A stretch of DNA of 63,717 nt, the filler included, from Perkinsus chesapeaki ATCC PRA-425 (lineage: Eukaryota > Protista > Perkinsozoa), in the NCBI GenBank assembly GCA_013115145.1. It is 7 parts of 7 records of this genome, joined end to end, with 100 filler letters (N's around TTAATTAATTAA, not from the genome) between each part and the next. Parts side by side here need not be neighbours in the genome. Positions count along the whole stretch, not along the records: positions 33,413 to 58,157 come from JAAPAO010000538.1; 6 more parts are not named here. One strand, 5' to 3'. Numbering within the stretch: the stretch's first letter is position 1; each line of letters opens with the position of its first letter. The notes below the pieces were generated by a model. It saw nothing but the letters and a program-made list of their open reading frames with translations, made no database searches and had not been told where the DNA came from. Positions 33,655 through 53,900 of this stretch are shown piece after piece. Position numbers and translations under genes: made by a program.

Positions 33655-36307
33655 CATTCCCCTAAAGTCAGTAATAGATCATCCCCAAATAATATGATGA
33701 TCTACCCTCGCCCACGATGGTGGTTGTCGTTCTATGACCTCGTCGATATCGTTTATGCGATTGTCCAAGCAATAGTCATGGCTATACCAGTAGTGGCTCC
33801 CCCTAACCCCAATGCCTGGTATGTGCCTCTTATGGTAAGGCTGGCTAAGAAGCGTTAGCGCCGTCAGACTCCCTCTTCTATTAGGTATTCATGGGCCCGT
33901 CAACTGCACCTCTTGCACCTATGGAGCCGATACCAATGATTATCATCTCCATCGTCTGCATGCTAATGTTTTGCTTCCCGTGTGCCATCGGCTTTCTCGT
34001 CCATTACCTCGGAATGGTGGCATCTGGTGGAACTATGAATCGTGCTTGGGCTTGCTTCGCTGTCCTGCCCTTCACTATGCTGCTTTCTCTGTGTCTTCCA
34101 GAGGCTCGTACTAAGTTCAGCAAGGTTGTATCTCCTGCTCTTATAATGGCTTTCTGTTACGTGCCCGTTGGTTTCTATATGCAGGACCCTTACCTCGAAG
34201 TCGGTACCATGCTACTCTTAGCTCTTTGGTTGCTTGCCATTGCGTGCGGCGTATCAATTGTCTGGAAACTGCTCCACTGGATACCGTACAAGGGACCAGA
34301 ACCACCTCAAGTGTTCGCCTATACATATGCTGACTTCTTCGATATTCTTATCGGTTACTTCGATTCCGCTACCGACCACCCTGAAGTGATTAAAACTACC
34401 TTCGATCAGTTCAATGAAGCGTGCATGGCCCTTGCTCCATGCAAGAAAATATCTCCCCTTGAAAGCGAAGTCATGTGGAACATGGCGGGTGAACTCCTTG
34501 CTCTTTATGACTGTCTTAATGAACATCAGTTCGATCGTATCACCCGAAAGGTGCTTTGGCAACCTTTGGCATCTGAAGTGCTCGATATTCGCTCTGCTGT
34601 GGGACGGGTGATGAGGAAAACCGCTGACGGTGACCCCATAAGAGCAGACATGAATATACAAGAGGATATCGATGCCCTCCAGAAACACGCGGGCGAGGTG
34701 TCCGATACCTTACGAGATTGCCAGGCTCTCGCTGGTAAGGAGCTTGATCGAGTCCAAGTAACTCGTTTTTATTATGCCATCGAGTCGATTCTGTCAATAG
34801 CAGTCTTGGCAGAGAAATACCGAGTTTTGCATGTGAAAGCTGATGAAGCGGCAAAGGAGAAGGCTGAAAAGAATAAGGTAAGCCATAAAGAAAACTGACA
34901 ACGTTATTTTCACTTCTTCAGCAACTGAGCCTCTGTACCAAAACGGCCGGCCTAAGCAAGACCATTTGGAGTGCGATAAAGGGATGGTTGAAGCGGCCAC
35001 TCTTTGATGATCTTCATGGCTCCTCCGATCTTATGTCTCGTATGCGAGTTCCCCTTCGAACCGCCTTTGGCATGAATATTCTTTGCACTATGCTTGTACT
35101 GTGGGGTAACTACAGTGAGATTGTCAGACTTCATGGCTTCTGGGCGGTTATACCACAATACGTTCTTTACCTACCAACTGCTGGTGCCACTCTATTAAAA
35201 GGAACTAGACGTATGATTGGCACCCTACTAGCTGGAGTGGTGTCAGTGCTCTGCCTTTACCTGCATCCTGGCAATATGGCAGCCTTCTTTGTTGAGAACA
35301 TTTTGTTCGTAATCATTGCAAAGCTCGGCCTAAAGGACAAGAGGGTCGGCTACGCTGCTTATGTGTTCTACTTTACTTGGTCAATCATAGGATGGGGATC
35401 TATATTGGTGCCCATGCCCGAATCGCAGCAGTTACAAGTAGCACTGTGGCGTCTTGTCTTCACCACCGGCGGTGTGCTCCTAATGCTTCTTTCGAGCTGC
35501 TTGATATTCCCTAACTTCGCTGCTACTCAATTGATCGAGGCTAGCAAAACATCCATTGAAAGTGTGGCAGAAGATGTGGCTCCCCTTCTACTTGGTGGGT
35601 ACTTGAAAGATTGCGAAGGAGAGGACCAACGACTTGCTGCCCTTGTCGAAAATTGGCAAAACTTTGGCCGAGAGGCATACAATCAGATAGCCTCTCGCAT
35701 TAACTTGAAGATTGATTCAGCTGCTGAGATAGCTGTTTACGGTAGACTTCATTTGGTCCCAGAGCTGAGCAAGCGTGTTTGGCGAGAACAGAAGTACATC
35801 ACCAACATTCAGCGCAGCGGTCTTGTTCTCTTCACTTCGGTGATCGTTCTCTACCCTCACGCTAAAGATCCGCAAATTCAGGACCTCTTCCGCCCTGCGA
35901 CAGATATAATAATAGCATTTGGTAAAGCTGTTCAAGCTTCCGGTACAAGGATGACGGAATTCCTCAAAACCGGTGTCCTGTCCAATGTGTCTGCGGCCGA
36001 TGATGATCTCCACGTTGAAGTTCAAAGATGTCTCGAGGCCATGCACGACTTGCAGGATAGAATCGCGACTGAGTTCTTGGCGAATCCAAACAGGCAGGGT
36101 GATCCATCGGCCATTATGAAGCTGTTCCATGCAGCTTATGCTCTATGCGACTTCGCCACTTCCTGGGAAGAGCTGGAGAATGCCCTTCTGGGCAAAAGGG
36201 TTCCTTGCGAAATGGCTGAGAGTTTACCTAATGAAGGTTCCTCCAATCCTTCTCAGACGGTTCCTACGTTGCGAGGGAGGGTACCATCTTCAGCTACTAC
36301 AGCCTGA
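33655..36307 (+). CDS. ALMT / aromatic-acid-exporter (FUSC-like) multi-pass membrane protein, possibly 5'-truncated
   Basis: ORFs 33891-34898 and 34988-36307 join in frame via GTAAGC..cttcag (KNK|QLSLC); GFWAVIPQYVLYLPTAGATLLKGTRRMIGTLLAG matches the ALMT/FUSC WAV..GAT.KG..R..GTL motif; two TM clusters. Confidence 0.75.
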
Positions 36308-38311
36308 ATACGTCATTCATCCTGTTGCGTTGGCTACAACTGTGACTGTATTCATTTAGAAAACATTATCTTCGTATTCTAAATTGCTGTGGTGCTAGTC
36401 AGTCATAAGAGACGGGATCTGGTACAAACCAGTCTAAAGGTATAATACGTAATGGATGGCGAAAACAACACTACCGAGTCGTAAAGCGAGGTTAGTTGCG
36501 TTACTCGGCGACGAAGGTAGGATGCCTGTCACATTGGGATGTTGAATAGCCCTACCGGAGGCAAACTGGCTAAGCCGCGCAACAAATATCCGCTACGCGT
36601 ACGGAAAGCGCACAATCCTCTGAGGCGCTAAGTCAGATCGGCAGTTGTGCATTGCGGAGCTTGCCTCTTGTTATGTACCCTCTATCGAATGCTTGTCACG
36701 CTTAGATTGTTGTGGCAAGCGTCGGACGATCGTCATTCGTTCACCGGTCCCCCTCAGTGGAGCGAACCGACCCGCCTACCCCGACAACAAGCTTCACGCT
36801 GCGCTGGCTTGGAACGCTTTTTCCAGTGCAGAAAAGCCATTCCCTAGTTCCAAGCTAGGTTGCTACGTGCTGTTCAATAAAATACAAGGCACGGCATGCC
36901 CGCCCGCAGTATTCTCTTGGTGGCTTCAATGTGAGATTTTTCTCACCGTAGGATGCATGAGTTACTTGATCGTGTATTGATCTGCCTCTAAGTTACCTAA
37001 CAAGCGGGTCACACAAACTGCACCATCAGAGAATTTTGCTACTACAACAAGCTGCTAATAAGCAAAGCGACATTGCTGAGAATGGCACAGGTTATTAAGT
37101 AGTCGTTGCAGTGCAGTGTCACGCGAAAGTGACCCCTTTCGAATGATGGTGCGCAAGCCCATCAGTAGCTGTACGCTATAACGCATTTAAAGTACAGTTG
37201 CACGCATATACAGCACTTAAAACAGATCGCTTGCATTTCGGTGACATGCAACACTTTTCATGATCTTTCGTTTGCAGACTTCTTCTCTCCTTCCAGCGTA
37301 TCCTCTATCGATCCCTGAGTGGCCCTGAGAAGGAGGGCAGTGGTGTGCCCGCTGTTCAGCACTGATAGTTACTCACCTTATGGGTTTCTGTGAATCGAAC
37401 ATAGAATGGGGGCCGATCCCACCCATTGAGCAACCGACTCCTTTGAGCCGCTCAAATACTTTACGATTGGGTTGTATCGGTTGTGAGTTTGGCACGGTCC
37501 GCTGCCAACGCACACTTCGTCATGAGGAGGGTCTACGCCTACTAGCTGCTTCCATGTATTATGATCGTGGATGGTAGCCCTCATTGAGGGCTGTATGATA
37601 TCCAGTCCTCGATCCCTGCCAAGCAAAGCTCACCATTGCGTCGGTACAGCGGTCGCGCACAAATGGTCAGAATTGTGACAGCTGTCCCGTTTCCTTCCTT
37701 GATTGATACGGCCTCTAGTTTCAAGGGTTGCCATCCGCGTCGGAATTTCATACCGTATTGGTTGGCACCCACCATACGTTTTTGCCTCCGCAGGTCTTCG
37801 CTCCTGTTTATAGTAAGTGCAATAAGATATGCTAGCAGCGCTGTCTCGGATACTGCAGTAGACTATGGCTATCATACACTGTATGATGTTCGCTATGAAA
37901 TTGCCCAACGTCATAATTAGCTTTCATTTTGATGACCGTTACATGCCTTCAGAGGTTTATTACTGAGTCGGTATTAAACCTCTGAAGTCATGTCAGTAAT
38001 TCTATGAACGAATTCCTGCTGTATACTTGGGTAGGGACAAATACGAGCCAACCTCGCTGGAAGCAGGCAACGGTTGGATTTTCACAATTCTCAAGCTTCA
38101 TTCCTAGCATTAGCAACAGACGTATTAGTGGTAGCTACTTGGTTAGGAGGCTTGAGCAGCGACACCGTGCTAGCTGTTGGAGTATTCCGTTAGCGTCGCC
38201 ACGCAGGCGACCCAGATGATATGCCATTCAACTTGTGTTTCACCAATAACGTGTAATTTGGGGGTTATCGCGAGTGTTCTAGTTGAGGGTAATCGCTCAT
38301 GTCTATCTCAG

Positions 38312-39708
38312 CAGCTGAGTCTCTGGACCAAGATGGTGGGAGGACTTAAGGTCATTGGAGGCGCTGTGAAGAAATGGTTGAAGCGCCCGCTGTTTAACGA
38401 TTTGCACGGCTATTCCGATCTTATTTCCCGTATGCGAATTCCCGTACGAACCGCTTTAAGCATGAGTATAGTTTGCACTATGCTTGTACTGTGGGGTAAT
38501 TACAGCGAGAATGTTAGACTTCATGGCTTCTGGGCGGTCATACCACAATACGTTCTTTACCTACCAACTGCTGGTGCCACTCTATTAAAAGGCACTAAGC
38601 GTATCATCGGTACCTTACTTGGTGGCGCGTTGGCAGTGCTCTGCCTCTACCTGCATCCTGATAATATGGCTGCCTTCTTAGAAGGCCCTTCTATGTTGAA
38701 AATATTCTGCTCGTTATGGTAGCGAAGTGTGGTTTAAAGAACAAGACTATCGGCTACGCTACTTACGTATTCTCTTTTACGTGGATGATCGTTGGATGGG
38801 GTCCATCATGATACCCATGCCCGAGTCCGAGCAATTCTCAGTGGCCTTATGGCGTTTCGTCTTCACCACTGGCGGTGTGCTTCTAGTTATCCTTACCAGC
38901 TGTCTTGTCTTCCCGAACTTCGCTGCTATTCAACTAATCAAAGCGAGTGAGAGGTCTATTCAAAGTGTGGCTGAAGGCATTGCTCCCTTTCTGATTGGTG
39001 GCTCTCTTAAGCAGTGCGAAGGTGACGACGAGCGAATGGCTGCTCTGCTGCAGAAATGGCAAGACTTCGGCCGAGATACGTATACCGAGGTAGCTTCACG
39101 TATTAGTTTCATGGACGATGCCTCTGCGGAGATCGCTGTTTATGGTAAAGTCCATTTGGTGCCCGAGTTGAGCAAGTGGATTTGGTTGAAGCAGAAATAC
39201 ATAACAAACACCCAGCGAAGCGGCCTCGTACTTCTCACTTCAGTGGTGAAACTTAACTCACGCTCAGGACTCGGAGATACAAGAGCTTGTTAGCCCAGCC
39301 ACGCCTAGAATGCGCTCTTACGGAAAAGTTGTTCAAGCCTCTGCGACAAGGATGACTGAACTGCTACGAACTGGTGTCGTGTCCAGTTCCCTTGGTGTTT
39401 CCAATGCCGACGATGATCTCCATGTTGAAGTACAGAGGTGCATCGAGACCATGCAGGAGATGCAGAACCGCATCACCGATGAGTTCTTGGCGAGTCCTAA
39501 CACAAGTGGTGACACTTCTGCCATCATGGAGCTGTTTCCTGCAGCTTACGCATTAAGTGACTTTGCTCTTGTCTGGGAACAGCTGGAAAATGCACTTATG
39601 GGCGAGAGGCCCCCCTGCGAACTTGTTGAGCGCTCGCAACATACCGCGAGCTCTAGCGCTTCTGGAGCGGTTCCTACTCTGCGAGGGATCGCACAGCCTT
39701 CATCCTGA
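38312..39708 (+). pseudogene. Frameshifted partial duplicate of the last exon of the ALMT-like gene
   Basis: Colinear with 34922-36307 from the splice acceptor; 14-nt insertion near 38678, 1-nt deletion near 38800, 2-nt deletion near 39255. Confidence 0.85.
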
Positions 39709-40599: not shown

Positions 40600-43500
40600 G
40601 CTATAGACTCAACCATTGAGGTTATTCCCTCCTAGCTCCGAGTAACCGCTGTATTTTGGCCGGTCTCGGTCACCTATCATAACCAATACTGACCACTGGC
40701 TTCAATACCTACTCATAGGATGGGGCCGCCTAGGGAAGGCTCCCTGTGTGGTGCTGCTGAGTTCCTCCACTATAAGGGAGCTTTGTCTAAAGTCTCTGTC
40801 GAAAGGACGGTTGCCGAGAGCTCGGATGTTAGTCGGTTGCCTGAAAAAATGTGAATCACCAGCATCTTGAAGCACCTTACCCGAGCCCGAGCGACGGAGG
40901 CATACCATACCCCTGTCGGCCGAATCCAGCTTGATACAGTCCAGAAACCTTATCGCCGGGCAGCTGAATACATCAGAATCAAATTCGCTTTTCAAAGGTC
41001 CAGCTCACCAGAACTTGATCCCTTGCTTGCTTAATCATATGTCTGGGATCGGCCAGCTCCACCTCTCTATGCCGGAGAGTCTAAGACACACTGGTCGTAT
41101 CACAATACGCCCTCTTTGCCTACCTGCTGCATTGCCTCCATTTTACTAGCCATCTCCAACAACTTGGTCTGCATCGTCTGATTGTCCCTGCGCATCTCCA
41201 TAACCCCAAAGTCGGCGTGCCAACTCACTTAGCAAGCATTTGGTTATCACTAACGAGCTGGGATGTCTTTGTTTGATGGTATCGCATTTCCAACATCAAG
41301 TGCTTCATATCCTGCTGAGCATTCAGCAGTGCCTCCTAATAAATGACAGCAATTAGGCACTCCCAAGCTGACCGTAGCGCCACCTGAAGGTCCTTCACTT
41401 GCTTATCAGCCCGGCCACTCGCCACCAACGCAGCATGCCCTAGATGACCGGTCTCCAATATAAAGCATGCCCACTCTCCTCCTCCTCACCTCCCTTGCTA
41501 GCTCCTCCAGCGGTTCCTGTCCCTCCACCACGAGCGCCCGCCGCAGCTTCGTTCTGCAGTTTAATAATCTCATGATTAAGTTGATGTATAATATCATTCT
41601 GTTGCTTCATAACCTAACACTCGTATAGATACGACACTTCCACTGGGAACCTCACCGCCGCCGCGTTATTTAGTGGCCGATCGGCCACAGCAGACTTGTA
41701 CATTTCAGCCTCGGCCTGCTTGGCCGCTAACAGCCGTTTGAGCCCTTCAATATCGGCAGATTCATCGCCTTTGCTGGTTTTCAAAGCCAGCGCAGTGCTC
41801 CCAGCAGATCTTTGCTCTCTCTTCTTCAATACAAAACCTATATGACCATGGTGAGCCCAAAAGCCTACTGCTATTAGCCTGTACTATGTAACTATAGGAA
41901 TATTACTAGTATTAATAATCCCATAGTATTATAGTAGTAATTATTAGAACAATTTACTACCATATACGACTCCTAATCTCACAATCTTAGTAATTCATCG
42001 ACGTAAATGTGCCTCTATTTCACATTTTCAAGTGAGAATCGGAATCAGCGAGATCTCTATGCCAATGCGTTATTGATTCGCTAACTATAAGTTGAGCGGG
42101 AGCCAGGTACAGCAGCAGATACGTTCCAGGTTCTTACACTTATTAGTCGACGAGAAATCGTTGAAAAAGTATAGCAATAATTTTCAATGTGAATGGCTAT
42201 ATCTATGCCCCCAAATTCGTGACGCCTACCTTTAGTCTTAAGACGGCTAACTTCCATTTTAGCCACTTCCAGTTCTCCTTGCAAGCATCCCCGACGGATC
42301 TCTGCATCGGTGAGATCCTTCTGCAGCTTAACTATCATCTGTGCCTCCTCTCCTCTTCCATTCAGTTGCTCCTCCAGACGTGCAAGTTCCTACACAAATA
42401 GCATACCCTCCAGCAGTAGCCTCGGTCTCACCTCCTCCTTGGCCATGATGGCCGTCTGTAGTTGTTGGATTTGCAGCCCAAACAGACCTTGAGGCTCCCC
42501 GCTGTTGGCTGCCGTACCGCCGGTAACCGCTTCGAGAAGATCCTCTGTGTCGGCCACATAATCCTGAAATGGCAATTACTTCTGTACCCGGGAAAACAAC
42601 GACCACTCATCAAAGCTACTATGCACCCAACCATTAGATGACAATAGCTACAGACTTCCAGCCTAGGTTGGGAAATTGAGGGTGCTGGTACGGTATCAAT
42701 ACTACCAGATTCCGGGCTTACATAGAAAGCGTAGAAACCTCCCTCAAGTCCCTCCTGGGCTGCATCCAGGCACCTCACCCTTACCTGTATAAAGTCTATT
42801 TCCTTCTGTAACGTCCTCATTGTCTTAATCAAAGGATGCATAGCATCAGCCTCCACTTCCTCTTCGACCTTCTCAGCATCTTCCTCCCCCTGAGCCCATC
42901 CCTGCTCCCCTCATATTTTCACTTCCTTACCTTTTTCCCTCCCTCCTCATCAACATCTGATCCACCACCGTCTGCTGCCTCAGCAGCAGCTGCTGCCTCC
43001 TTCGCCGCCTCCTCAGCAGCTATCCTCTTCTGTTCAGCCTCTATTTCCCGAGCCAACCCTGTCGCCATGACAATCGAATTCACCACCTCCTCCATCGATG
43101 TTATCATCTCCTCAGCCTTCTCTCGAGACGGTACCATATCCGTCTGGTCTCCGACATGGAACCCGATCTAACACAGCCACCCTATATTATAGTTAGTATA
43201 ACTTATATAATGTTAATTATAGATAAAATGTTGATTAAAGATATAATGTTAATTATAGATATAATGTTGATTATAGATATAATGTTGATTGAAGATATAA
43301 TGTTGATTATAGATATAATGTTGATTATAGATATAATGTTAATTATGGATATAATGTTGATAATAAAATATAATACTACTTAATAGTAATATAAATAAAA
43401 TCATTTGTATATCACAAACTGTATTATATATACTGTACAAGTGGACCAGCACTGCTGCTGGTGTCCGTGCTCAACCCACCTTAACAAGATCCCTAAGGAC

Positions 43501-43951
43501 CCTATGTGCTCTCCTAGCCTCCACATTGGCCCCGGCCGCTTGAGAATTAAGCTCCTTTATCTGTCCTTCCAAATCGCTCAACTTCACCAGTATCGGATTC
43601 CTCGCTTGCTCTTCCATCTGAAACAATACGATAACCCACCGACTATGGGACCGAACTGTCTGCGGATGGCAGTGAATTCACGGTCGATAGAAGCATGTCG
43701 AAGCAGTTCCATTTGAATACATCGGCGATGCTACCCTAACCACAGCGTTGTACTTCCACGCACAGTAAGCCTATCAAACGGCGAGAGCGTAGCCTCACCT
43801 CGGGCAACTCGGCATCTTTGATCGATCCTCGTTTCTGCTTGCCATTGCCACTGCCCTTCGCCATCGCCTCCTCCTCTAGAAGCTCATTAGCTCTATCCTC
43901 CTCCTCCTCAGCGAATGCAACTACTTCTAAGAGTGTCTCGCAAATACCTGA
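40600..43951 (-). CDS. Hypothetical large coiled-coil protein, multi-exon; boundaries approximate
   Basis: E/A/K-rich exon-like blocks with GT-AG ends, e.g. EIEAEQKRIAAEEAAKEAAAAAE, LQIQQLQTAIMAKEE, KLQKDLTDAEIRRGCLQGELEVAKMEVSRLK. Confidence 0.45.
43207..43365 (+). repeat. AT-rich 18-bp minisatellite, about 9 copies, intronic
   Basis: ATAATGTT(A/G)ATTATAGAT units. Confidence 0.9.
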
Positions 43952-44070
43952 TACACACAACGTGCCGGAAGCCGCAACAGGGATATAAAAATAAGTCGAC
44001 CTACGTCGTACGAATACTTAATAATAAGATTCACAAACAGAAATGATCAATTTCAATGATGTAATTATTA

Positions 44071-47000
44071 TCAGTAAATGGAAGCTGTAGAAAAAGAAAG
44101 CATGCACCAGTAAAAATACACAGTTATCGATTTCCTACGCTCCATAGGCTCCACCAGGCTAATAGCGTTCTTTGCACTGATGGTTCCCTTCCGTTTCAGT
44201 TGCTCTTGTATAAGGTCCGCTTGACTTGAAATTTTCCTCTGTTGTCCCTCCCCGTCAACTCCGGCACTCGAGGTTGTTATCGAAGTGCCGTGCAGGATGC
44301 TCAACTCAGCCTCGAGCTCTTGGATGCGCTCCAGCTGAAAAAAATGATTCGAAATTCCACCAATGGGGATCGAACCCGGGACCTACCATATCGCCGGAAT
44401 CATCGCCCATGGCACCACCGACGCTCATCACTCCCAAGGCCTTCAGGTGGCATAAATCCTGATCAGCCCTCTCCTTGAATAACCAAGTCTGTAACGTCTC
44501 TGTGTCCGATATCCTCAGCTCGCCTCTCTCTTGGAATGAGAACAAGCCAGACCCCTCGTGTTCCCTCATTATTAACTTGTAGGTCTCATCTCCAACGTGA
44601 GGATGAGAAGGCACGCCGGTCTCAGCAAGCCAGCCGGCTATTTGTACGCCGGGGCCGAAGAACGCGTATTGGGGTGCCTTCACTCGTCCGCCGATAACAC
44701 CAGCATAGGCAACGCCGGTATTAACTCCGATCTTCAGTTTTAAAGTTTGACCGGTACTGCCTATCTTCAACTGTTCGGCTAAAAATACGGAATAATACTG
44801 GAACCGAGAATCGAACTCGGGACCTACTGCGTGTTAGGCAGTCGTCATAACCAACTAGACCATTCCAGCGATGACACGCTTAATTTCACGAAAGACTTGC
44901 CCGTCCATTTCGCTTACCTTTCAAAAGCTTGTTGGCGAATCTCAAAGCGACCTCCGTGTGCTCGTCATTTGTCGACTCGTGACCGCAGATCGCCAAGAAT
45001 CGTTCACCATTCGACAAAACCGGATACATGCCATTGTCCTTGCTGAGCTGATCGAAACTGTTCGTCATTTTATTCATTAATACGACCAATTGAGTGACCG
45101 GCACCGCCTGACCAGGAACCAACAATGCATATCACTCTGCAATGGACTTAACTGAAATTCGCCGTTTAGCGTTTATGACACCTCGGATGTATGGAAAGCA
45201 GTTCAAGTATGATTTAACATTCTTTTATTCTAAATTATTCAAATTAAATATTATTTATATTGAATCCAATATTAAGATCATGCACGCACTAGATCTTCGA
45301 TCGGCGGGTGCGCTAAGGGCATGAAAAATTGCCCCGCAGCGCCTTTGCCGAGGTTGCCATAATCAGCAGTCGACTAGGGCTTGCAATAGTGAGTATAAGC
45401 AACACAACGTCATCGGTGAGTTCTCTTACTTGTGTTATCAGCTCAAACTGGTGAACCACCGCCGAAACACAACTGACGGACTCCAACTTATCAGCTATCA
45501 TTGTTGCTCCTCCTCTTAAACGATCGATTATGAACTTTGGCATTACTCTGCCCATCACCTACCACAGACACACCTTCATTCCCCCCATAGAGGTAATACA
45601 ATAACAACCATTATGTGGCGGCGCGCATCCAAACAACCGGTCTTTAGTATATGTTATAATGCAAAATATGGCATTGCATTCAGACTACTGTACAGCGACC
45701 TTTCAGAAAAGTCATGGAATACAAGAAAGGAGGAAGAGTATCTCCGGTATTTGACAAGAGGCTTTCGCCTCCATAAGGCCTTCCATTTTCTATGCTATGA
45801 TGACCATACGGTAGGAGCCAGACAGAAGGCCAGATGGCCCAAGAAAAACATATGTGTTGCCGATTGGGTCGTATAGAATAACAACACTAAGGAAACTAAG
45901 ATCGCCGACATTCTCACCTCATAATTCACTTTAGCCTTGTTCTCATGCTGGACGTGATATCGATTCCGTATAAGTGCAAATATGTGATCAACAATAATAG
46001 GAAGATTCTCCTCCGTAACCGGCTTGGAATATACCGCTGTTGCTCCTCGTCTGATGGCATCGACTCTGCTGGCGGAATCAGTCGACTTCGTCACAACAAG
46101 GACAGGCACCTGACAGGCTCTGAAATCAACTTCACAGATATTCTCTCTGAACAGGACAGCTAGGCCCACAAAGCCGAGATATGAAAGCATCTTCTATAGA
46201 TTCCTATAGACTTATATAGACTTATAGAGACTTATAGAGACTTATATAGACTTATGTAGACTTATATAGACTTATATAGACTTATATAGACTTATATAGA
46301 CTTATATAGACTTATATAGACTTATATAGACTTATGTAGACTTATATAGACTTATATAGACTTATATAGACTTATATAGACTTATGTAGCCTTATATAGC
46401 CTTATATAGACTTATGTAGACTTATATAGACTTATATAAACTTATGTAGACTTATATAGACTTATATAGACTTATATAGACTTACATTTCGCTATGGAAT
46501 ATATAGCAACTATGAGAGACACCTGTTGCTCAATATAATGCCCAGACTTTTCTGCCTATATGAAATAGTGGCAGCAAACCCATGCTATACCAACGCTGCT
46601 TGACACTGCTACTGTATTATAAATCGGGAATTTTGTGGCGCGTGACTCCTCACCTCCGGCGGTTTCTCCCTTCTAAACTGGCTTAAAAAGTCCAGTCCTG
46701 GCAAGCTTCCCGGCAGCTCCGTTTCCATAATAACAATATCCGGCATCGGATGCGTGTTGAAGTAGTCCAAAGCCGCAAAGCCATCAGCCACAGTGTTAGT
46801 CTTATAAGCTCTATCCACCAGCATCGGCCTCAGCAGCGTTGCAGTGTCATCGCAATCATCGATAATAAGCACCTCCTTAACTGATAGCTCGTTGATGGTA
46901 TTCTGCAGATCTTCTTCATCATCACCTTCACCAGCAACTCCCTCATCAGCCATAACCTGATCGATGAGCTTGTGGTCTCCACCGAGCCAATGACCTGCCA

Positions 47001-50000
47001 TTTTTTGAGCGAGCTCCTTCTTCTGGGCCCGACGCTTGGCCCTGGCATCCACGACCTCTCTGGCGTTACAGACCAAGTCGATGAAGAAAGTCGCTGAGAA
47101 CGATACGATATGTTATATTTTTACCATCATGCAAGCAAAAAAATATCCTTTTCTTAAAAAACGTGCACAAGCTGCTCTGAAAGATTATCCCAACGGCAAG
47201 AGTCTTCGTCCAAGACACCGATCGACTCAACCGGATTCACATCGCTCGCGCAGTATGAAACCGTTCCCATTCCCACATAAAATGATCAACTGTAACGCTT
47301 CTCTACGGCTTCCTAGATATCCTATATAGCGAAGGGATGCACCGGCAACTCAGACTTAACCAGATTTAAATCAGGACATACAGGAGCCAGTGCAACGCTG
47401 GCCGGCGATAATGCGAAATTAGGGTTTGGTGTTCGGGTTTCGGGTTTTCCATCACCTCCACCTACTTCCTTTCCCCATTTCAGATTCGCACCACAGCCTT
47501 CCACCATGCAGATTGATGACCTCATTCGACACCGACAACCCCAAGCCAAGACCTTCGTATCTGATCGCCCGGAGCTGGCTCAACCTCGGGAGCAAAAAGT
47601 GCAAAGTTAACAGGACGGGAATGTTCGTTGGCATGGAAGAAAAGGATATCAAAAGATAGGTTAAGCGAGCGCTTGATGCATCCCATGAGGAAGATTCGGT
47701 GTTCTTCTGAAAAACTTGAGGAACTTCTTTAACACTTAGCAACTTTGAAACTTCTATGTGATACGAATTCTTGTGAAACGGCTAGACTGGAGTTATGATT
47801 TCTATCACAGCTGTGCGTTGATGTTGTGAAAGTCAGGCTTCAACCTATGATGCGCCTTAAACCTCGAAAGGAATTACTTCCGATTCTCATGATCATCATC
47901 TTCCTGTTCGAACTCCGTGAAGATGCGCTTCACATTCTGGTCGGCAATACCAATACCAGTGTCCACTATCTTTATTAGAACCTAAAAATGCTCCATGCCG
48001 GGATCGAACTCGGGACCTCTTCCTACCCCTCTCGCCTTCCCTTTAGTCATAACCTTCACAGAGCCTTTAGACGTGAACTTGCATGCATTATTAATCAATG
48101 CTGACATCACGTATTCCAACCTAAGTCACGCGCCATAAAACTCGACCTCTACTGTGGAGCGAACTACACTTAAGTGAACACAGGGGGAGAAGTACAAGTC
48201 ACCACACAGTGATTTTTATAATAAGTTATGATCTATAAAAGAGGAGGAGTATACAACAACACTGTATATGCTATCATTAGACAATGTACTTATAAATCAG
48301 AGGTCACGCGACAATCATCTAGTTTGAATCTCGAATAGTTACTAAAAAATCTCCGTAGCTGGTAAGATTTACCTCGGGCTGGTAAGATGCGCCAAAATGG
48401 AAAAGACGATTCGAAAACGTTACCATCAAATCTACGTTATTGAGAGCCTGTTAATAAAGAGAAAGGATGGAATACGAGAATAGCCAGCAAAAAGGAGAAA
48501 ATAAGGAATTCACCCTCCTTAAGAAGCGTCACCTTTTTCCATTGCACATTTCTGATAGAAAAAGAGTGTCTATTCGTAGAATAGACACCCGAGAGGAAGG
48601 CCAAAGATTCTCTTGCCTGTCCTTGTCGCCCTCCACTTCAGGTGCGGCCGGATCCGGAAAGAACTCGAGCTCGACTTTGTCCTTCTTGATTTTCCTCCCG
48701 CGCTTGTCGACAGCTTCAACCATCTCCGCACAGACATGCTCACAAATCTCATTCATCTACTTCAATCAATCAGTCACGCGCCACAAAATACCTCCTACCT
48801 GAACCATACCAAAGTTAAGCTGCATTTTCTTAGTCTTCAGTGCTGCCATGTCCATAATCTCGTTCACCAACGCCAACAGTCGGACCTTTAAAAAAACTTC
48901 GCTCCGCTAGAACCCCCTCCGCCTTACCGCGCAATTGTTAATGATATCCAAATGCTTCTTCCGGCCAGCATTTGGCTCCGTCATCCTCAGTGACTCCGAC
49001 AGGCCGATGACGCCATTCAAAGGCGTTCCTGAAAGGCACTGCCAAAACGTTCCCCACAGACGTCCCACTTAGTTCATGATTCACAGTGGCCATAAAACTG
49101 TCCTTCTTTTTCTCCAGTTCACATATTTTCGTGCAGTCCCTCAGTATGGCACAAAGCGTGTAGTCGGCCGGATCCGAGTCGAAACTGAACAACAATTTCG
49201 CACCAGTAGCATTCTACAATTTTTCACAGGACTTAAAGAGGAACCTCAAATGGTCCAAGAAGGAGCGCGTGTGGCGTTCCTTCGCTCTAAGGACATATTT
49301 CCTAACAAAATTCCCATGGTACCTCCCCCGGATTGGGAATAGTCTTTCGCCTCGGGCAACACTCGCCCCAGTTTTATTACAGGATAGATACATATAAGGA
49401 ACTCGGGGTGACCTGCCCATCCTTATGCTTCACTTCAACATTCCTAGTCTCATCCACATGTACTCCTGAACCATAACAATTAATACCATATTTCCGTCAA
49501 CTCTTACTAGGTCGCCTATTAGGATCGGTGGCCATGGCCTCGTCCGCTTTCTTAACAAATTGCTGAAGCATAGCGTCGTGCGCTACTGCCACTCTATCCG
49601 GCATCAACATCTTGATATCTCGACCGATCAACTCGTCTGCTTTGAACCTGAGAGCTTTCGTTATGAACTTTCATGCAATCTATACGTCAAAAAAGGAGAA
49701 TACTATTTTAGTGGTATCTTCACGAGTGGGAGATAATACGAGCAAACTTGTCGGCTAAAGACTAGAAAGATCAAAAAAATTTACTTTTCCACCATTTTAC
49801 TAACTATTTCTAGTAATTTTTCAAACTTTACTTTTCTTACAAAATGATAAAGTAAAAATCCGAATTTGTAATACCAATATTCCATAATTGCGTATTGGCA
49901 ATGTTCCAGAAATTTCGAGTGGGCCGGAGAAGGTCTCGCTACCGTGAGCCGACGACTGTCGAAATGTGCCACTGGGATTGACACCTCGCCTTGGCTTTGA

Positions 50001-50651
50001 AAGATGCGAAATCCAGAATCGATTTTTCTTATCTTCGATAAGACGATTGATTCATTAAGGGATGCCACTGACGTGTATAATTTCTTCTGAATGAGTATGA
50101 CGTCCTAACAAAGTCGAAATTACTAACTTTCGAAAAGTTACTTTTCTCAATCTAGTGGTCCACCAAACAGATACTGAAACATAGGGGATCGATAGTAGAC
50201 CAGTTGGGAATCGACATGAAATGCGATACCAGCATTAACAGAGAATTCCGCCGAAATAGCAAAGTATACATCTGTTTAAGAGACACGTCCTATGGAAGTT
50301 TACGATGATACCGTCAAAATACGTTTTATTGACATCTGTCAAACTATTGCTATTTTAGAGGGAACACCCCTAAGCAAGTTTAGTCTGTAAAGATGAGTAT
50401 CTTTTAGAAACTAAAAAAGATACGTTTTACTAACTTGCGTAGTAATTATTTTAACATTGGCGTATCTTTTAATCCTTGCTCTATTATATATTCCTAATAA
50501 CATCTTCCCACTATTACCCAGTCCAAGCCTCTGATTGGCTATTCCCGTAAACTATCTTTCCTTGTCGATCAGCCAGGATTACCAAGTCATCTGAGATCTC
50601 GGCAAAGGAATCCATTCCCCGCCAGAATGGATTATTTTGGCAGTCGACCAT
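44071..50651 (-). CDS. Hybrid signalling protein: PAS - HisKA - HATPase - receiver - class III nucleotide cyclase-like domain, many exons; ends approximate
   Basis: PAS SDDLVILADRQGKIVYGNSQSEAWTG|FKADELIGRDIKMLMP; H-box ATVNHEL|RTPLNGVIG; N-box LINNACKFT; G1 IVDTGIGI; G2 GLGLGLSV; receiver VLIIDD..PDIVIME..|VLVVT..YSKP; cyclase LKIGVNTG..YAGVIG..PQYAFFG. Confidence 0.88.
44335..44386 (-). other. 52-nt intron made of a tRNA 3' half
   Basis: GTAGGTCCCGGGTTCGATCCCCATTGGTGGAA TTTCGAATCATTTTTTTCAG; removal joins ..SGDM|LERIQELEAEL in frame. Confidence 0.8.
44796..44869 (-). tRNA. tRNA-Val (AAC) inside intron 44779-44917 of the kinase-cyclase gene, same strand
   Basis: GCTGGAA/TTCCAGT acceptor stem, ACTGC-CT AAC AC-GCAGT anticodon arm, CCGAG TTCGATT CTCGG T-arm. 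Confidence 0.93.
46191..46484 (+). repeat. 10-bp tandem array (CTTATATAGA), about 29 copies, in the intron splitting the receiver domain
   Basis: Directly visible, with CTTATGTAGA and CTTATAGAGA variants. Confidence 0.95.
47982..48026 (-). other. 45-nt intron made of a tRNA 3' half
   Basis: GTAGGAAGAGGTCCCGAGTTCGATCCCGGCATGGAGCA TTTTTAG; removal joins KGKARG|VLIKIVDTGIG; unspliced it ends in an in-frame TAG. Confidence 0.85.
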
Positions 50652-50973
50652 AGAGAAGAATCTTAAGCTCAAGCTAGTCAGATACGTCGAAGCTGAGGTA
50701 TGTGGCCTTAAAGTCGATTACAACGCTCGAACGTAGGGAGACTAGGGAGACTCTGATAGCATCTTGCGCTCTTTCGTAAACTTGAAGTTTCTCATCGACA
50801 TTCGCTTGTGCCCCTCGATTGCTTATTGGAGGCCTTCGATTCTGAATGAAGTATCCTTAGGTTACACATGCAATATACAAGATAGGTCAGCCTAAAATCA
50901 TTTAAGCGACGCTTTAGGTCTAATAACCTATGAGGATTCTCGCTTCAGGACATATTGGCGGTCCCTTTCCCCT

Positions 50974-53900
50974 ATGTCCGAACAGCCTCTCTACGACGAG
51001 TTCGGCAACTATATAGGGCCCGAGAGTGACGTGGACGAGGCCTCCGATTACGAGAGTAATACAATAATAATTATACCGTATTTCCTTCAAATCCCGTCTC
51101 TATAGGCTCGGCCAGCGGCTCCGAATATGGCGGGGAGGCCTCCGCTCAGGAGCCCGTCCCTATGGACACCACTGAGGACAGCGGGCCAGTGGAGCAAAGG
51201 ATCGTTCTTGCCGAAGACAAGAAGCATTATCCCGATGCTGATGAAGTGTATCCGGAAGCAGACGTCGTTTTCCAGGTAATGAGGGGAGACCGCACTGCGA
51301 AGATTTTTAAAGTATCTTTCAGGACGAGGATACTCAGCCTATTACCCAACCTATTATAGCACCGACTAAGACATTCGACTTCGATAAGCTCGAGAAAGAG
51401 GTCAGTCCCCGTATGAATTTCCTTTGAAGCTCTCGCACAGGTACCGGAGCTGGTCTACGATTATCATTTCCTTGCCGGGCTGATGGAGCATCCAAGCCTC
51501 ATCAGAAACGTAGCGCTCGTGGGCGCATTGCATTCCGGAAAGACGCTCCTGTGCGATCTATTGGTCTCGCATACGTGGGCAGACCGGGCCAAGAAATTGG
51601 GGAATCTTGATAAGGAGGTTAAATATACTAATTTCCGCGAGGATGAAATTGACCGGGATCTGACCATCAAGTCAACGCCACTGTCTCTGGTGCTGACTGA
51701 TACCGACGATAAGAACTACCTCATTAACGTTATTGACACTCCCGGGCATCCTAATTTCCAAGACGAAGTCACAGCGGCTTTGAGGGTCTCTGATGGCGCC
51801 GTTCTCGTGGTTGATTGTGTGATCGGTGTTACTGATCATACCAAGCGGTTGGTAAAGCACATGTTGTCGGAAGGGCCGAATATGAAGTAACAGGTTTGGA
51901 GGGGAGAGGGGGCCTTATTCCTGGTCAGGTTTGTAGTGGTGCTATCTCAACTCGATCGTCTTGTTCTGGAACTCAGGTTGCCTCCTGAGGATGCATACTT
52001 CAAATTGAGGTAATATATGTACGGGGAGGCGGGGCTACATCGGCCTCGGACTGGTGGAAGCGATTTCCAATTTGACATTGGTACATTTTCAAATGCTGTA
52101 TTTGCGATAAAGTCCGTATACTGGCGACTTCCCTTTAGCGGGAATCTCTGTGGACCTTGTTTGACATAATATTAGTAATGGAATGCGACACATTGGTTTT
52201 TATGAATTTCTTGGGGTTGCCCATGACGCTATTTCTATAAGGCTCAGGAATGCTAGTGAGATAGAGGAAGTCCTTGTTGTAGAATCATGGAGGGTTTCTA
52301 GTGCGATAATGGGAGATACAAAGTGCTTGTGGGAAAAAAGGTCAACGAACCACGCCTCAATTTTGCACCACATCTCGGTGTCGCTTCGTCTGTCTCTGAG
52401 CGATCAAGTCTAATGTCATTATTCATAGGTATGTTATCCAAGAACTCAACAGCTACATTAGGGAGCAGTGCGAATTGATGGGCCTAAATAAGGACGACTA
52501 CGTTGTGTCACCTATTAGAGGAAATCTAGCCTTTGCTAGTGGCCTCTACCAGTTCGTATTTACCACATATTCTTTCGCGAAGTACTACGTCGAGGCCAAC
52601 ACGGATGCATTCCGCACCAGCGGTGGCGACCAGAATGCTGAGAGCAACAGCCTACCTGCCGCCTTTGGAAGGGCATCTCAGGAGGGCGGCCTCCAGGCGC
52701 ATCAGGTCAATGAGTATGCAAGGCGATTGGCTCGGGGCATGTGGGGCGATGTCTGGCGAGATAAGAGGACTGGACAATTTGTGAAGTCGCCACCAAAGGA
52801 CCAGGGGGAGGTTCAGAGGACTTTTGTGGAGTTCTTCCTGATACCGTTGTATAAGATGATCGGACATACAATTGGAGAGGAGCAGGAATCCCTGCAAGTG
52901 ACTTTGGGGGATGTTGGCATTTATCTCTCGCAGAAGGATTATTATGCGAAGTCAACAAAGTAATAATGGAAATGCAAGGAGGCCGTCAAATTGATTGTAC
53001 ATATCGGCTTTCATTTCTTGGTTGTTGTTCGTACGCGTTTTGCAGCGTCTGAACAGAGGGTGATATAAAGTAGCAAAGCTCTTTGATGGCGTGAGAAATA
53101 ATAGTGAGCCAACCATGCATCTTGAAAGTGCTAGTATTCGGCCCATAGACTTCGTGTGGTGTGATATTATATTACTTATCTTCAATTATTTACGCTTATG
53201 AGATAGTTAAGCTTAAACGGGTGAAGCCGACGAAATCGCCCTCTACGGCTGATCTGGAAGTTCTGTTGGGAAAATCCCTCAAGCATAGAAGATAAACTAC
53301 TTTGTTAAGAGTGATGTCCTATTGGCGGTTTTTATTTCAAAAATGTTACTGTCGCGAGATTCGCTTCCGAGCAGATAGTAGCCAATTTCAGGTCTTTGCT
53401 GAAGAAAGTGTTGTCACAGTTCTTCGGCGGTCCACAGCCGTTGGTCGACCAGCTTGTCGCAAAGCTTCCCAGTCCACAAGAGAATGCTGCGGTAATTCAC
53501 TCGCTTGCATTTGGTCAGTTATTTTAATGTTCAGAATAAGATAGCGAAGATCTACTCCGGGAATCAGACGGGACAGATCGCAGATGATATGCGAAATCTT
53601 CGAGCGAATGGTGAGCTCTTGGTCCACACTTCCAAGAACTATCACAAGTAAGAAGCGGATACATGGGAAAGCATCAGGTGCTGCCAAGGAATGAAAGTTT
53701 GTTTCCTTTTGGCCTTGGGGCAAATTTCCTGACGAACTTTTCATTGTATCGCCTCCGCATTAGGAACAGATATATGCCCAGAGTCTGGATGGCTTCTTGG
53801 TCGGGCGGAGGAAGTTGGAGTCTCTGTGGGGGAAAATCTTTACCAACTCGTTAAATTTTCATGAGGCAAATGTAGAGACAATTTGCCTTTGGAAATTGAT

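What the first reader, a model, noticed from the sequence alone, without database searches (positions are those of the whole stretch)
44071..50651. PAS-histidine kinase-receiver-cyclase fusion in an alveolate-like genome
Seen: one gene with a FixL-like PAS, an intact H-box (NHELRTP), N/G1/G2 boxes, a receiver and a class III cyclase fold. Known: two-component signalling is considered absent from apicomplexans; a kinase-receiver-cyclase module occurs in algal histidine-kinase rhodopsins (2c-Cyclop), where a rhodopsin is the sensor. No rhodopsin-like TM region is visible here. Inference: a soluble gas/redox/ligand sensor, possibly acquired laterally and then heavily intronized.
Basis: partly seen in the sequence, partly recalled or inferred. 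Interest (0 to 1): 0.78.

Follow-up and report, generated by a model that had tools for sequence, protein, structure and literature searches.

The report
Perkinsus sensor kinase with dead cyclase
This is a real, single, intron-rich gene of the shellfish parasite Perkinsus chesapeaki that joins a FixL-like, probably heme-binding sensor to an intact histidine kinase, but its receiver and cyclase parts have lost their catalytic residues, so it is unlikely to make cyclic nucleotides, and fusions of this kind were already reported in Perkinsus.

Summary
On the minus strand a 32-exon gene starts at 50651. It encodes PAS, HisKA, HATPase_c, receiver, class III cyclase-homology domain (CHD) and a roughly 680-residue helical tail, with no membrane segment.

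The piece is a Perkinsus chesapeaki contig. The gene is already annotated as FOL47_008411 (1529 aa, hypothetical protein).

Orthologues lie in conserved synteny in P. marinus and P. olseni, where annotation splits them wrongly. A paralogue and an Oxyrrhis marina transcript have the same architecture. Kabbara et al. 2018 already reported Perkinsus histidine kinases, one of them with a cyclase domain.

What appears unreported:
- The kinase motifs are intact.
- The receiver has Glu at the phospho-Asp position.
- All six canonical cyclase catalytic residues are replaced, in every family member examined.
- Even so, every domain is under strong purifying selection.
- The PAS core matches only heme PAS sensors (FixL, EcDOS) in the PDB, with the proximal His aligned.

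Most likely it is a soluble gas- or redox-regulated histidine kinase and scaffold with a pseudo-receiver and a pseudo-cyclase, not a 2c-Cyclop-like cyclase. No RNA data were available. Interest is moderate.

The parts
40609..50651 (-). Whole gene: 32 annotated exons, ATG at 50651, stop at 40609-40611. Equals Perkinsus chesapeaki FOL47_008411 (P0269, 1529 aa).
   Evidence: P0269 lies on a contig of 24,745 bp, the exact length of the piece. Every exon maps exactly. Stop codon read.
49120..50651 (-). PAS domain. Exons about 50518-50651, 49509-49647 and 49381-49463, plus the start of the exon beginning at 49184. The His68 codon is at 49578-49580. Intron 1 is 870 nt here but only about 40 nt in the sister species.
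   Evidence: Pfam PAS_9, PAS_4 and PAS. FixL and EcDOS alignments place the proximal His on His68. Foldseek top hits are FixL and DosP. Intron lengths.
48799..49184 (-). End of PAS plus HisKA (DHp). The H-box His179 codon is at 49076-49078. NHEL|RTP is split by a 43-nt intron.
   Evidence: HisKA 57.6 bits against a cutoff of 26.9. DNA read. Residue coordinates.
47467..48756 (-). Kinase linker and HATPase_c exons (48617-48756, 48024-48120, 47877-47978, 47467-47559). Holds N box N330, G1 D357, the F box and G2 G388.
   Evidence: HATPase_c 83 bits, profile positions 3-107 of 111. Motifs compared with relatives.
47094..47465 (-). Intron between the G2-box exon and the receiver exon. This is the junction that decides one gene or two.
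   Evidence: Donor A|GTA and acceptor CAG|CN are conserved in three species. The split codon reads ACG, ACC or ACT, always Thr. The HATPase_c profile runs across the junction to residue 423.
45918..47093 (-). Last HATPase_c strand (TTFFIDLV), linker and receiver domain. Exons 46654-47093 and 45918-46109, separated by an intron holding a (TCTATATAAG)n repeat. Glu540 (46723-46725) sits at the phospho-Asp position. The DD pair, Thr570 and Lys592 are kept.
   Evidence: Response_reg 64.7 bits. Alignments to PhoP, TM0468 and Spo0F and to bacterial receivers.
44387..45558 (-). Class III cyclase-homology domain. Exons about 45433-45558, 44913-45110 and 44387-44778. Substitutions: V661 for metal Asp1, L701 for Lys/Glu, E705 for metal Asp2, A772 for Asp/Cys, Q779 for Asn, W783 for Arg.
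   Evidence: Guanylate_cyc 79.2 bits. PDB alignments. Alignments A1. AlphaFold and Foldseek. Coordinates.
40609..44334 (-). C-terminal tail, residues about 865-1529 in 16 exons. It is rich in Ala, Glu, Leu and Gln and partly heptad-like. Motifs such as LVEPME and HP(I/L)(I/L) are shared with Oxyrrhis.
   Evidence: Exon map. Composition and a crude heptad scan. Conservation. No Pfam hit.
49235..49300 (-). Annotated mini-exon (P0269 residues 121-143). Probably not coding.
   Evidence: No aligned codon in P. olseni or P. marinus. The direct junction CT|GTAA...CAG|T TTC GAC is conserved in three species. pLDDT is below 40 there.
48121..48616 (-). Probable GC-AG intron. The annotation instead reads 27 extra residues (292-318; 48534-48615) up to a downstream GT.
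   Evidence: The donor is AG|GCAAGA here and AG|GTAGGT or AG|GTAAGC at the same codon in the sister species. The extension is absent from all relatives.
46957..46998 (-). A 42-nt in-frame stretch (residues 449-462) that is a GT-AG intron in both sister species. Here it starts with GC, so it is either a GC-AG intron or exonised.
   Evidence: It is absent from P0157 and holds a stop in P. olseni.
44796..44869 (-). tRNA-Val(AAC) gene inside the intron between the second and third cyclase exons, on the same strand as the host gene.
   Evidence: ARAGORN on the window. Found at the orthologous intron in P. olseni and P. marinus. The sequence is identical across the three species.

Best explanation
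This is one gene of Perkinsus chesapeaki (FOL47_008411) for a soluble protein of about 1,470-1,530 residues. It belongs to a family shared by Perkinsus species and the early-branching dinoflagellate Oxyrrhis.

Shown:
- The domain order is PAS, HisKA, HATPase_c, receiver, cyclase-homology domain, long helical tail.
- The kinase has every catalytic motif.
- The receiver has Glu instead of the phospho-accepting Asp.
- The cyclase-homology domain keeps the class III fold but has lost both metal-binding Asp, both substrate-specifying residues and the transition-state Asn and Arg.
- All domains are under strong purifying selection.

Inferred:
- The PAS binds heme through His68, as FixL and EcDOS do, and reports O2, NO, CO or redox state to the kinase through the short PAS-DHp helix.
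- The kinase autophosphorylates on His179.
- The attached receiver cannot accept the phosphoryl group in Perkinsus. The phosphoryl group therefore goes to a separate, unidentified acceptor, or the kinase acts mainly through conformation.
- The Glu-receiver acts as a fixed, phosphomimetic-like module. The dead cyclase domain serves as a dimerisation, scaffold or nucleotide-binding module that, together with the tail, positions the kinase or recruits partners.
- The protein is not expected to make cAMP or cGMP.
For: One gene:
- P0269 maps exactly onto 32 exons.
- The last HATPase_c strand (TTFFIDLV) is encoded on the same exon as the receiver, and the Pfam HATPase_c match crosses that junction.
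- The junction's splice sites and its split Thr codon are conserved in three species with third-position variation.
- The window and P. olseni have no in-frame ATG upstream in that exon.
- The Oxyrrhis transcript P0285 (1410 aa) carries the whole architecture in one ORF.

Kinase intact.

Pseudo-receiver: Glu aligns with the phospho-Asp of PhoP, TM0468 and Spo0F and of bacterial receivers. The same Glu is present in P. marinus and P. olseni.

Pseudo-cyclase:
- AC8 and sGC beta1 alignments show VQIAGW where the canonical motif is VN.ASR.
- The RhGC alignment shows GE where the canonical motif is GD.
- Multiple alignments show all six positions replaced in the orthologues, the paralogue, Oxyrrhis and two metagenomic or transcriptomic relatives.
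- The fold is intact.

Selection: pN is 0.04-0.10 against saturated pS of 0.71-0.89 in every domain. The cyclase domain is the most conserved, at 93-94% amino-acid identity.

Heme PAS:
- Only FixL and EcDOS match residues 40-120 in the PDB (E = 0.008, 0.39 and 0.67).
- His68 falls on RmFixL His194 and EcDOS His77.
- The first 24 Foldseek hits are heme PAS domains.
- This His is conserved in P. marinus, P. olseni and the paralogue.

Soluble.
Against: - No transcript data exist for this species here. No RNA run was listed and nothing was laid on the gene, so all splice junctions are inferred.
- P. marinus and P. olseni annotations split the locus.
- Heme binding is only inferred. E-values are modest and the PAS model is poor (mean pLDDT 57.6). 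In Oxyrrhis the His is not at the same alignment column.
- An intact, conserved kinase next to a receiver that cannot be phosphorylated leaves the phosphoryl acceptor unknown.
- The function proposed for the dead cyclase domain and the tail is conjecture.
- A non-canonical catalytic activity of the cyclase domain cannot be excluded from sequence alone.
Confidence: 0.6

Rival explanations
1. It is a working two-component cyclase like 2c-Cyclop or cyanobacterial CyaC. The PAS-controlled kinase phosphorylates the attached receiver, which switches on cAMP or cGMP synthesis by the cyclase domain.
For: The domain order is the same. The kinase is intact. The cyclase fold is well preserved and strongly conserved. 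Kabbara et al. read such alveolate proteins as two-component systems coupled with cyclase activity.
Against: The receiver has Glu, not Asp, at the acceptor position; in 2c-Cyclop D1092 is required. All six canonical class III catalytic residues are replaced (Val, Leu, Glu, Ala, Gln, Trp). The paralogue is degenerate too, so a complementing heterodimer of the two is unlikely.
Confidence: 0.07
2. There are two or three adjacent genes, not one: a PAS-kinase gene and a separate receiver-cyclase gene, as annotated in P. marinus (371 aa plus 1091 aa, 200 nt apart). They might be separated by spliced-leader trans-splicing of a polycistronic precursor.
For: P. marinus and P. olseni annotations split the locus. 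Perkinsus uses spliced-leader trans-splicing (own knowledge). The receiver exon has an internal Met (QKM) that could start a shorter product.
Against: - The P. marinus start codon lies 17 nt upstream of a conserved CAG acceptor, and the window and P. olseni have no such ATG.
- The kinase models end before or inside the G2/G3 region, which would leave HATPase_c without its last strand.
- The split Thr codon and the TTFFIDLV strand are conserved.
- The P. olseni split coincides with an inverted segment in that assembly, while another isolate's model joins receiver and cyclase (P0001).
- The Oxyrrhis transcript is fused.
Confidence: 0.08
3. The architecture is as in the best explanation, but the PAS is not a heme sensor. 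It binds another cofactor or a small ligand, or only mediates dimerisation.
For: - Sequence matches to FixL and EcDOS are weak (E = 7e-5 to 0.7).
- A flavin PAS (MmoS, 3EWK) scores equally on the N-terminal half.
- The Oxyrrhis relative has its His displaced in the alignment.
- The PAS model has low confidence.
Against: The Fα-helix segment carrying LMP...HD matches only heme PAS proteins in the PDB, with the ligand His aligned. Heme PAS structures take the first 24 Foldseek ranks. There is no LOV-type Cys motif.
Confidence: 0.25

Closest known systems
Perkinsus marinus histidine kinases PmariHK1-3 and Vitrella VbrasHK1 (Kabbara et al. 2018, PMC6324907)
   Same: Alveolate histidine kinases that are not apicomplexan. 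PmariHK1 has a C-terminal cyclase domain. The P. marinus orthologue of this gene lies in conserved synteny (EFTUD2, kinase, receiver-cyclase, Brix, L23). A P. olseni paralogue has the same PAS-kinase-REC-cyclase order.
   Different: The paper lists domain architecture only and reads it as coupling to cyclase activity. It does not note the lost receiver Asp or the lost cyclase residues. The P. marinus orthologue of this gene is split in the annotation, so PmariHK1 is probably the paralogue (inference).
2c-Cyclop, two-component cyclase opsins of Chlamydomonas and Volvox (Tian et al. 2018, PMC6284317)
   Same: Kinase, receiver and class III cyclase domain in one polypeptide, with an intact H-box and G boxes.
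   Different: 2c-Cyclop has an 8-TM rhodopsin sensor, needs the receiver Asp (D1092) and makes cGMP. Here the sensor is a soluble PAS, the Asp is Glu and the cyclase residues are gone.
Dictyostelium adenylate cyclase R (ACR) and cyanobacterial CyaC (PMC3009899)
   Same: Kinase-receiver-cyclase fusions. In ACR part of the relay is degenerate, and the DHp domain serves dimerisation of the cyclase.
   Different: ACR is the mirror image: its kinase lacks the phospho-His while its cyclase is active, and it is membrane-bound with 7 TM helices. CyaC has a working relay and an active cyclase.
FixL and EcDOS/DosP heme PAS oxygen sensors
   Same: The segment G..E(L/V)IG.(D/N)(I/L).(M/I)L(M/I)P....(A/E)H(D/P) matches, with the proximal His aligned (His68 to RmFixL H194 and EcDOS H77). 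As in FixL, the PAS is joined directly to a HisKA kinase.
   Different: This is a eukaryotic, intron-rich gene. Heme binding is untested. Identity is only about 16-21% over the domain. The output is not a FixJ-type response regulator.
Pseudo-receivers with Glu at the phospho-Asp position, such as plant pseudo-response regulators (own knowledge, not tested here)
   Same: A receiver fold that keeps the acidic pair, Thr and Lys but has Glu in place of the phospho-accepting Asp.
   Different: Unrelated lineage and context. Here the pseudo-receiver sits between an intact kinase and a dead cyclase domain.

Membership tests
HisKA-type sensor histidine kinase | DHp domain with a phospho-accepting His in an H-box | tested here: met
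   HisKA 57.6 bits against a cutoff of 26.9. The motif is VNHELRTPLNG, with His179.
HisKA-type sensor histidine kinase | Catalytic ATP-binding domain with N, G1, F and G2 boxes | tested here: met
   HATPase_c 83 bits. The motifs are INNACKF, VDTGIGI, FTEFEQ and GLGLGLS, conserved in the relatives.
Hybrid histidine kinase (kinase plus phospho-accepting receiver) | Receiver domain with the conserved phospho-accepting Asp at the end of beta-3 | tested here: not met
   The fold is present (64.7 bits), but Glu540 aligns with the Asp of PhoP, TM0468, Spo0F and bacterial receivers. The Oxyrrhis relative keeps Asp.
2c-Cyclop (two-component cyclase opsin) | N-terminal 8-TM rhodopsin with a retinal Lys | tested here: not met
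   No hydrophobic segment. The protein starts 14 residues before the PAS domain.
2c-Cyclop (two-component cyclase opsin) | Receiver Asp required for cyclase activation, and an active guanylyl cyclase | tested here: not met
   Glu replaces the Asp, and the cyclase catalytic residues are replaced. The requirement is described in PMC6284317.
Class III nucleotidyl cyclase | Cyclase-homology fold | tested here: met
   Guanylate_cyc 79.2 bits over profile positions 4-182 of 183. Model pLDDT 87; TM 0.80-0.90 to Cya, GC-A and RhGC.
Class III nucleotidyl cyclase | Two metal-binding Asp, transition-state Asn and Arg, and a substrate-specifying pair (Lys/Asp or Glu/Cys) | tested here: not met
   The six positions hold V661, E705, Q779, W783, L701 and A772.
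FixL/DOS-type heme PAS sensor | PAS fold with the proximal heme His on the F-alpha helix | tested here: met
   His68 aligns with RmFixL H194 and EcDOS H77. These are the only PDB hits for residues 40-120. Heme PAS domains top the Foldseek list. E-values are modest.
FixL/DOS-type heme PAS sensor | Actual heme binding and gas-dependent switching | not testable with these tools
   This needs spectroscopy of the recombinant domain.
Perkinsus/Oxyrrhis PAS-kinase-REC-cyclase-tail family | Same domain order plus the family-specific degenerate cyclase motifs (CGH, EGSGL.F.ERG) and tail motifs; synteny for the orthologues | tested here: met

The most novel reading that the evidence does not exclude
The cyclase-homology domain of this Perkinsus/Oxyrrhis family is not a relic. 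It may be a repurposed output or ligand-binding module, since a conserved Cys-Gly-His...Glu-His cluster replaces the metal-Asp region. In that reading it is driven by a heme-PAS oxygen-sensing histidine kinase. Perkinsus would then have locked the intervening receiver with Glu (Ser in the paralogue) while Oxyrrhis still uses Asp. That would make it a previously undescribed oxygen-signalling pathway in an alveolate parasite that does not work through cyclic nucleotides or a classical His-Asp relay.
Probability: 0.25. Interest if true: 0.55.

Novelty: new variant of a known kind. Interest (0 to 1): 0.4.

Why it matters
- **Annotation.** Evidence from three species argues that the P. marinus and P. 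olseni models at this locus are wrongly split, and that two or three segments of the P. chesapeaki model are probably intronic.
- **Caution about domain lists.** The published inference that alveolate two-component systems are coupled to cyclase activity would not hold for this family. The receiver Asp is lost only in Perkinsus. The cyclase chemistry is lost in every member examined.
- **Biology.** It gives a concrete, testable candidate for an oxygen or gas sensor in Perkinsus, a parasite of oysters and clams that lives in hypoxic host tissue and for which CRISPR editing exists (PMC8062965, listed).
- **Pseudo-enzymes.** A strongly conserved pseudo-cyclase and pseudo-receiver next to an intact kinase is a clean case for studying how dead enzyme domains are kept as signalling modules.

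Tried and rejected
- **RNA evidence.** The look-up of sequencing runs listed no holder of the stretch. It gave only two 5-Mb runs of the same species label, and nothing was laid on the gene.
- **First cyclase exon alone against the PDB.** No hit. Its alignment rests on Pfam and multiple alignments instead.
- **PAS structure.** The model has low confidence (pLDDT 57.6), so I used the Foldseek ranking only as supporting evidence.
- **Supplement of Kabbara et al.** It is not held, so I could not tell whether PmariHK1 is the orthologue or the paralogue.
- **Inverted repeats at the P. olseni inversion breakpoints.** None found, so a real inversion and an assembly error cannot be told apart.
- **Pseudogene.** Rejected. 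The ORF is intact over 32 exons, and pN is far below pS in every domain.
- **Complementation of the dead cyclase domain by the paralogue.** Rejected, because the paralogue is degenerate too.
- **Kinase phylogeny to test lateral transfer.** Not attempted. The best hits outside the family are bacterial hybrid kinases at 23-29% identity, which is uninformative without broad eukaryotic sampling.
- Searches used single exons by reference or the database protein P0269.
Full report
**What is there**

In the range 43,900-51,000 the minus strand carries a string of short open segments separated by GT...AG stretches. Scanned one by one against Pfam, these segments hit HisKA, HATPase_c, Response_reg and Guanylate_cyc. 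The reading frame opens with ATG at 50651. About 320 nt upstream, on the other strand, a Snu114/EFTUD2-type GTPase gene begins. That leaves no room for an upstream membrane sensor.

**Identity**

- A full HMMER search with the largest cyclase exon found one close cluster, from Perkinsus olseni at 94% identity. All other hits were at or below about 40% identity and E = 1e-15 or weaker.
- A word search seeded with the P. marinus relative returned P0269, "hypothetical protein FOL47_008411 [Perkinsus chesapeaki]". It is 1529 aa, and UniRef names it "histidine kinase". It lies on a contig of 24,745 bp, exactly the length of this piece.
- P0269 maps without mismatch onto 32 exons from 50651 to 40612, followed by TGA.
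- So the gene is real and already in GenBank.
- Pfam on P0269 gives PAS_9 23-91, HisKA 170-231, HATPase_c 317-423, Response_reg 491-600 and Guanylate_cyc 650-835, all above or near the curated cut-offs.
- Residues 850-1529 have no Pfam family. They are rich in Ala, Glu, Leu and Gln and partly heptad-like. The protein has no membrane-type segment.

**One gene or several?**

P. marinus annotates a 371-aa PAS-kinase and, 200 nt downstream, a 1091-aa receiver-cyclase. P. olseni has three models. Five observations argue that these splits are artefacts.

1. In P0269 the HATPase_c profile runs to residue 423. The exon boundary is at residue 416/417. The last strand of the ATP-binding domain (TTFFIDLV) is therefore on the same exon as the first half of the receiver.
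2. In all three species the upstream exon ends ...GG(A/G) A|GTA(A/G)G and the receiver exon begins ...CAG|C(G/C/T) AC(T/A/C) TTC TTC. The split codon reads ACG, ACC or ACT, always Thr. This is what a real, selected junction looks like.
3. The window and P. olseni have no in-frame ATG upstream in that exon. The P. marinus "start" sits 17 nt before the acceptor.
4. The P. olseni kinase model stops before the G2-box exon. In that assembly most of receiver exon 1 is inverted in place. Another P. olseni isolate has it collinear and joined to the cyclase (P0001).
5. An Oxyrrhis marina transcriptome contig (MMETSP0469, P0285, 1410 aa) carries PAS, HisKA, HATPase_c, REC, cyclase domain and tail in a single ORF.

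No RNA data for this species could be reached. The junctions therefore remain inferences.

**Refinements of the annotated model**

- Residues 121-143 and 292-318 of P0269 have no counterpart in P. olseni, P. marinus, the paralogue or Oxyrrhis.
- At the second site the sister species splice at AG|GTAGGT or AG|GTAAGC. The window has AG|GCAAGA at the same codon, which is most simply a GC-AG intron that the gene finder could not use.
- Residues 449-462 correspond to a GT-AG intron in both sisters and also start with GC here.

**State of the catalytic sites**

- **Kinase.** The H-box (VNHELRTPLNG, His179), N box, G1, F and G2 are canonical and conserved in the relatives.
- **Receiver.** In alignments with PhoP, TM0468, Spo0F and bacterial receivers, the phospho-accepting Asp column holds Glu540 (DIVIMETELPG). 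The acidic pair, Thr570 and Lys592 are kept. P. marinus and P. olseni have the same Glu. The paralogue has Ser, a metagenomic relative has Ala, and Oxyrrhis keeps Asp.
- **Cyclase domain, fold.** The fold is certain: model pLDDT 87 and Foldseek TM 0.80-0.90 to mycobacterial Cya, GC-A and rhodopsin-guanylyl cyclases.
- **Cyclase domain, residues.** Every canonical residue is replaced:
  - metal Asp1 is Val661;
  - substrate Lys/Glu is Leu701;
  - metal Asp2 is Glu705;
  - substrate Asp/Cys is Ala772;
  - transition-state Asn is Gln779;
  - transition-state Arg is Trp783.
- **Rest of the family.** The paralogue, Oxyrrhis and two further relatives are degenerate at the same positions. They share new motifs instead, such as (I/V)CGH and (E/D)GSGL(F/Y).F.ERG.

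**Selection**

Against P. olseni and P. marinus, synonymous differences are saturated (pS 0.71-0.89). Non-synonymous differences are 0.04-0.10 in every domain. The cyclase-homology domain is the most conserved, at 93-94% amino-acid identity. The degenerate domains are therefore functional in some non-canonical way, not decaying.

**The sensor**

- With residues 1-175 as query, RmFixL is one of the two best PDB matches (E = 7e-5), and EcDOS follows.
- With only the core (residues 40-120), the sole PDB matches at E up to 10 are RmFixL (0.008) and EcDOS (0.39, 0.67). His68 falls on the proximal heme ligands His194 and His77; I counted these from the chain offsets.
- The AlphaFold model of the PAS is poor overall (pLDDT 57.6, with the core at 70-83). 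Even so, Foldseek ranks FixL, DosP/EcDOS and another heme PAS in the first 24 places.
- His68 and the downstream R-N-V-E-V-K-H-K-D-G segment are conserved in the three Perkinsus orthologues. In Oxyrrhis the His is displaced in the alignment.
- I read this as a probable heme PAS, at about 0.5-0.6.

**Mechanism proposed**

A soluble dimeric kinase has autophosphorylation on His179 set by the ligand or redox state of a heme PAS, as in FixL. In Perkinsus the attached receiver cannot take the phosphoryl group. It is a fixed Glu module. The phosphoryl group must therefore go to an unidentified separate acceptor, or the kinase signals by conformation. The dead cyclase domain, which in real cyclases is an obligate dimer, and the long tail most likely provide dimerisation, scaffolding or partner binding. 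Cyclic nucleotide synthesis is not expected. The domain anatomy and residue states are shown. Heme binding, the gas signal and the output are inferred.

**Comparison with the known**

- Kinase-receiver-cyclase fusions are known from cyanobacteria (CyaC), Dictyostelium (ACR) and green algae (2c-Cyclop).
- ACR is the mirror image of this protein: a dead phospho-His with a live cyclase.
- For alveolates, Kabbara et al. 2018 found no histidine kinases in Apicomplexa or Symbiodinium. They found three in P. marinus, one with a cyclase domain, and seven in Vitrella, one with kinase-REC-REC-cyclase.
- The library searches I ran turned up no paper reporting that this family carries a pseudo-receiver in Perkinsus, a pseudo-cyclase in all members, a FixL-type PAS, and an orthologue in Oxyrrhis. 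No search was aimed at pseudo-cyclases or pseudo-receivers as such.

**Lateral transfer**

The closest kinases outside the family are bacterial hybrid kinases at 23-29% identity. That is uninformative. Any transfer would predate the Perkinsus-Oxyrrhis divergence, and the gene now has 31 introns.

**Verdict**

The thing is a new variant (dead receiver and dead cyclase) of a known kind of fusion, in a lineage where the fusion was already reported. Interest is moderate.

Noticed in passing
window 44796-44869 (-); L001 10420-10493; L002 11172-11245: A tRNA-Val(AAC) gene sits inside the intron between the second and third cyclase exons, on the host gene's strand. It is at the orthologous intron in P. 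olseni and P. marinus, with identical sequence.
   Followed up: partly
window 48001-48017 and 44367-44383 (-); L001 8219-8235 and 10902-10918; L002 9375-9391: A 17-mer like a tRNA T-arm or Pol III B-box (GGTCCCGRGTTCGATYC) lies in two very short introns (45 and 52 nt) of the gene. These two and the tRNA-Val are the only three matches in the 58-kb window (expected 0.02). The one in the N-box/G1 intron is kept at the orthologous intron in all three species although synonymous sites are saturated. The T-stem pairing is not kept, but the B-box core is. They could be TFIIIC sites or remnants of a tRNA-derived element.
   Followed up: partly
window 48615-48616 and 46997-46998 (-): Two introns that begin with GT in both sister species begin with GC here (AG|GCAAGA and ATG|GCAGGT). 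The gene finder appears to have worked around the first by adding 27 residues and to have read the second as coding.
   Followed up: partly
L001 8843-9277 (P. olseni JABANP010000174.1): About 435 bp holding most of receiver exon 1 is inverted in place in this P. olseni assembly, with one breakpoint inside the exon (FLSQ|FRREKPPE). This gives a spurious 158-aa Response_reg gene on the opposite strand. Another isolate is collinear (P0001). No inverted repeats flank it.
   Followed up: partly
window 46210-46500: About 30 tandem copies of the 10-mer TCTATATAAG (minus-strand reading) lie inside the 544-nt intron that splits the receiver domain.
   Followed up: no
window 49648-50517: Intron 1 is 870 nt in P. 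chesapeaki but only about 40 nt in P. olseni and P. marinus. It is probably an insertion. Its content was not identified.
   Followed up: no
window 33891-36307 and 38177-39708 (+): Two tandem copies of a gene for an ALMT/FUSC-type membrane protein (Pfam ALMT 4e-14, FUSC_2). The second copy is split over three ORFs, so it either has introns or is decaying.
   Followed up: partly
P0274 (P. olseni FOZ63_011044, 1718 aa): The paralogue's annotated model is fused to a replication factor C subunit 4 and a SERF/zf-met2 protein at its C-terminus. This is almost certainly a merged gene model.
   Followed up: no
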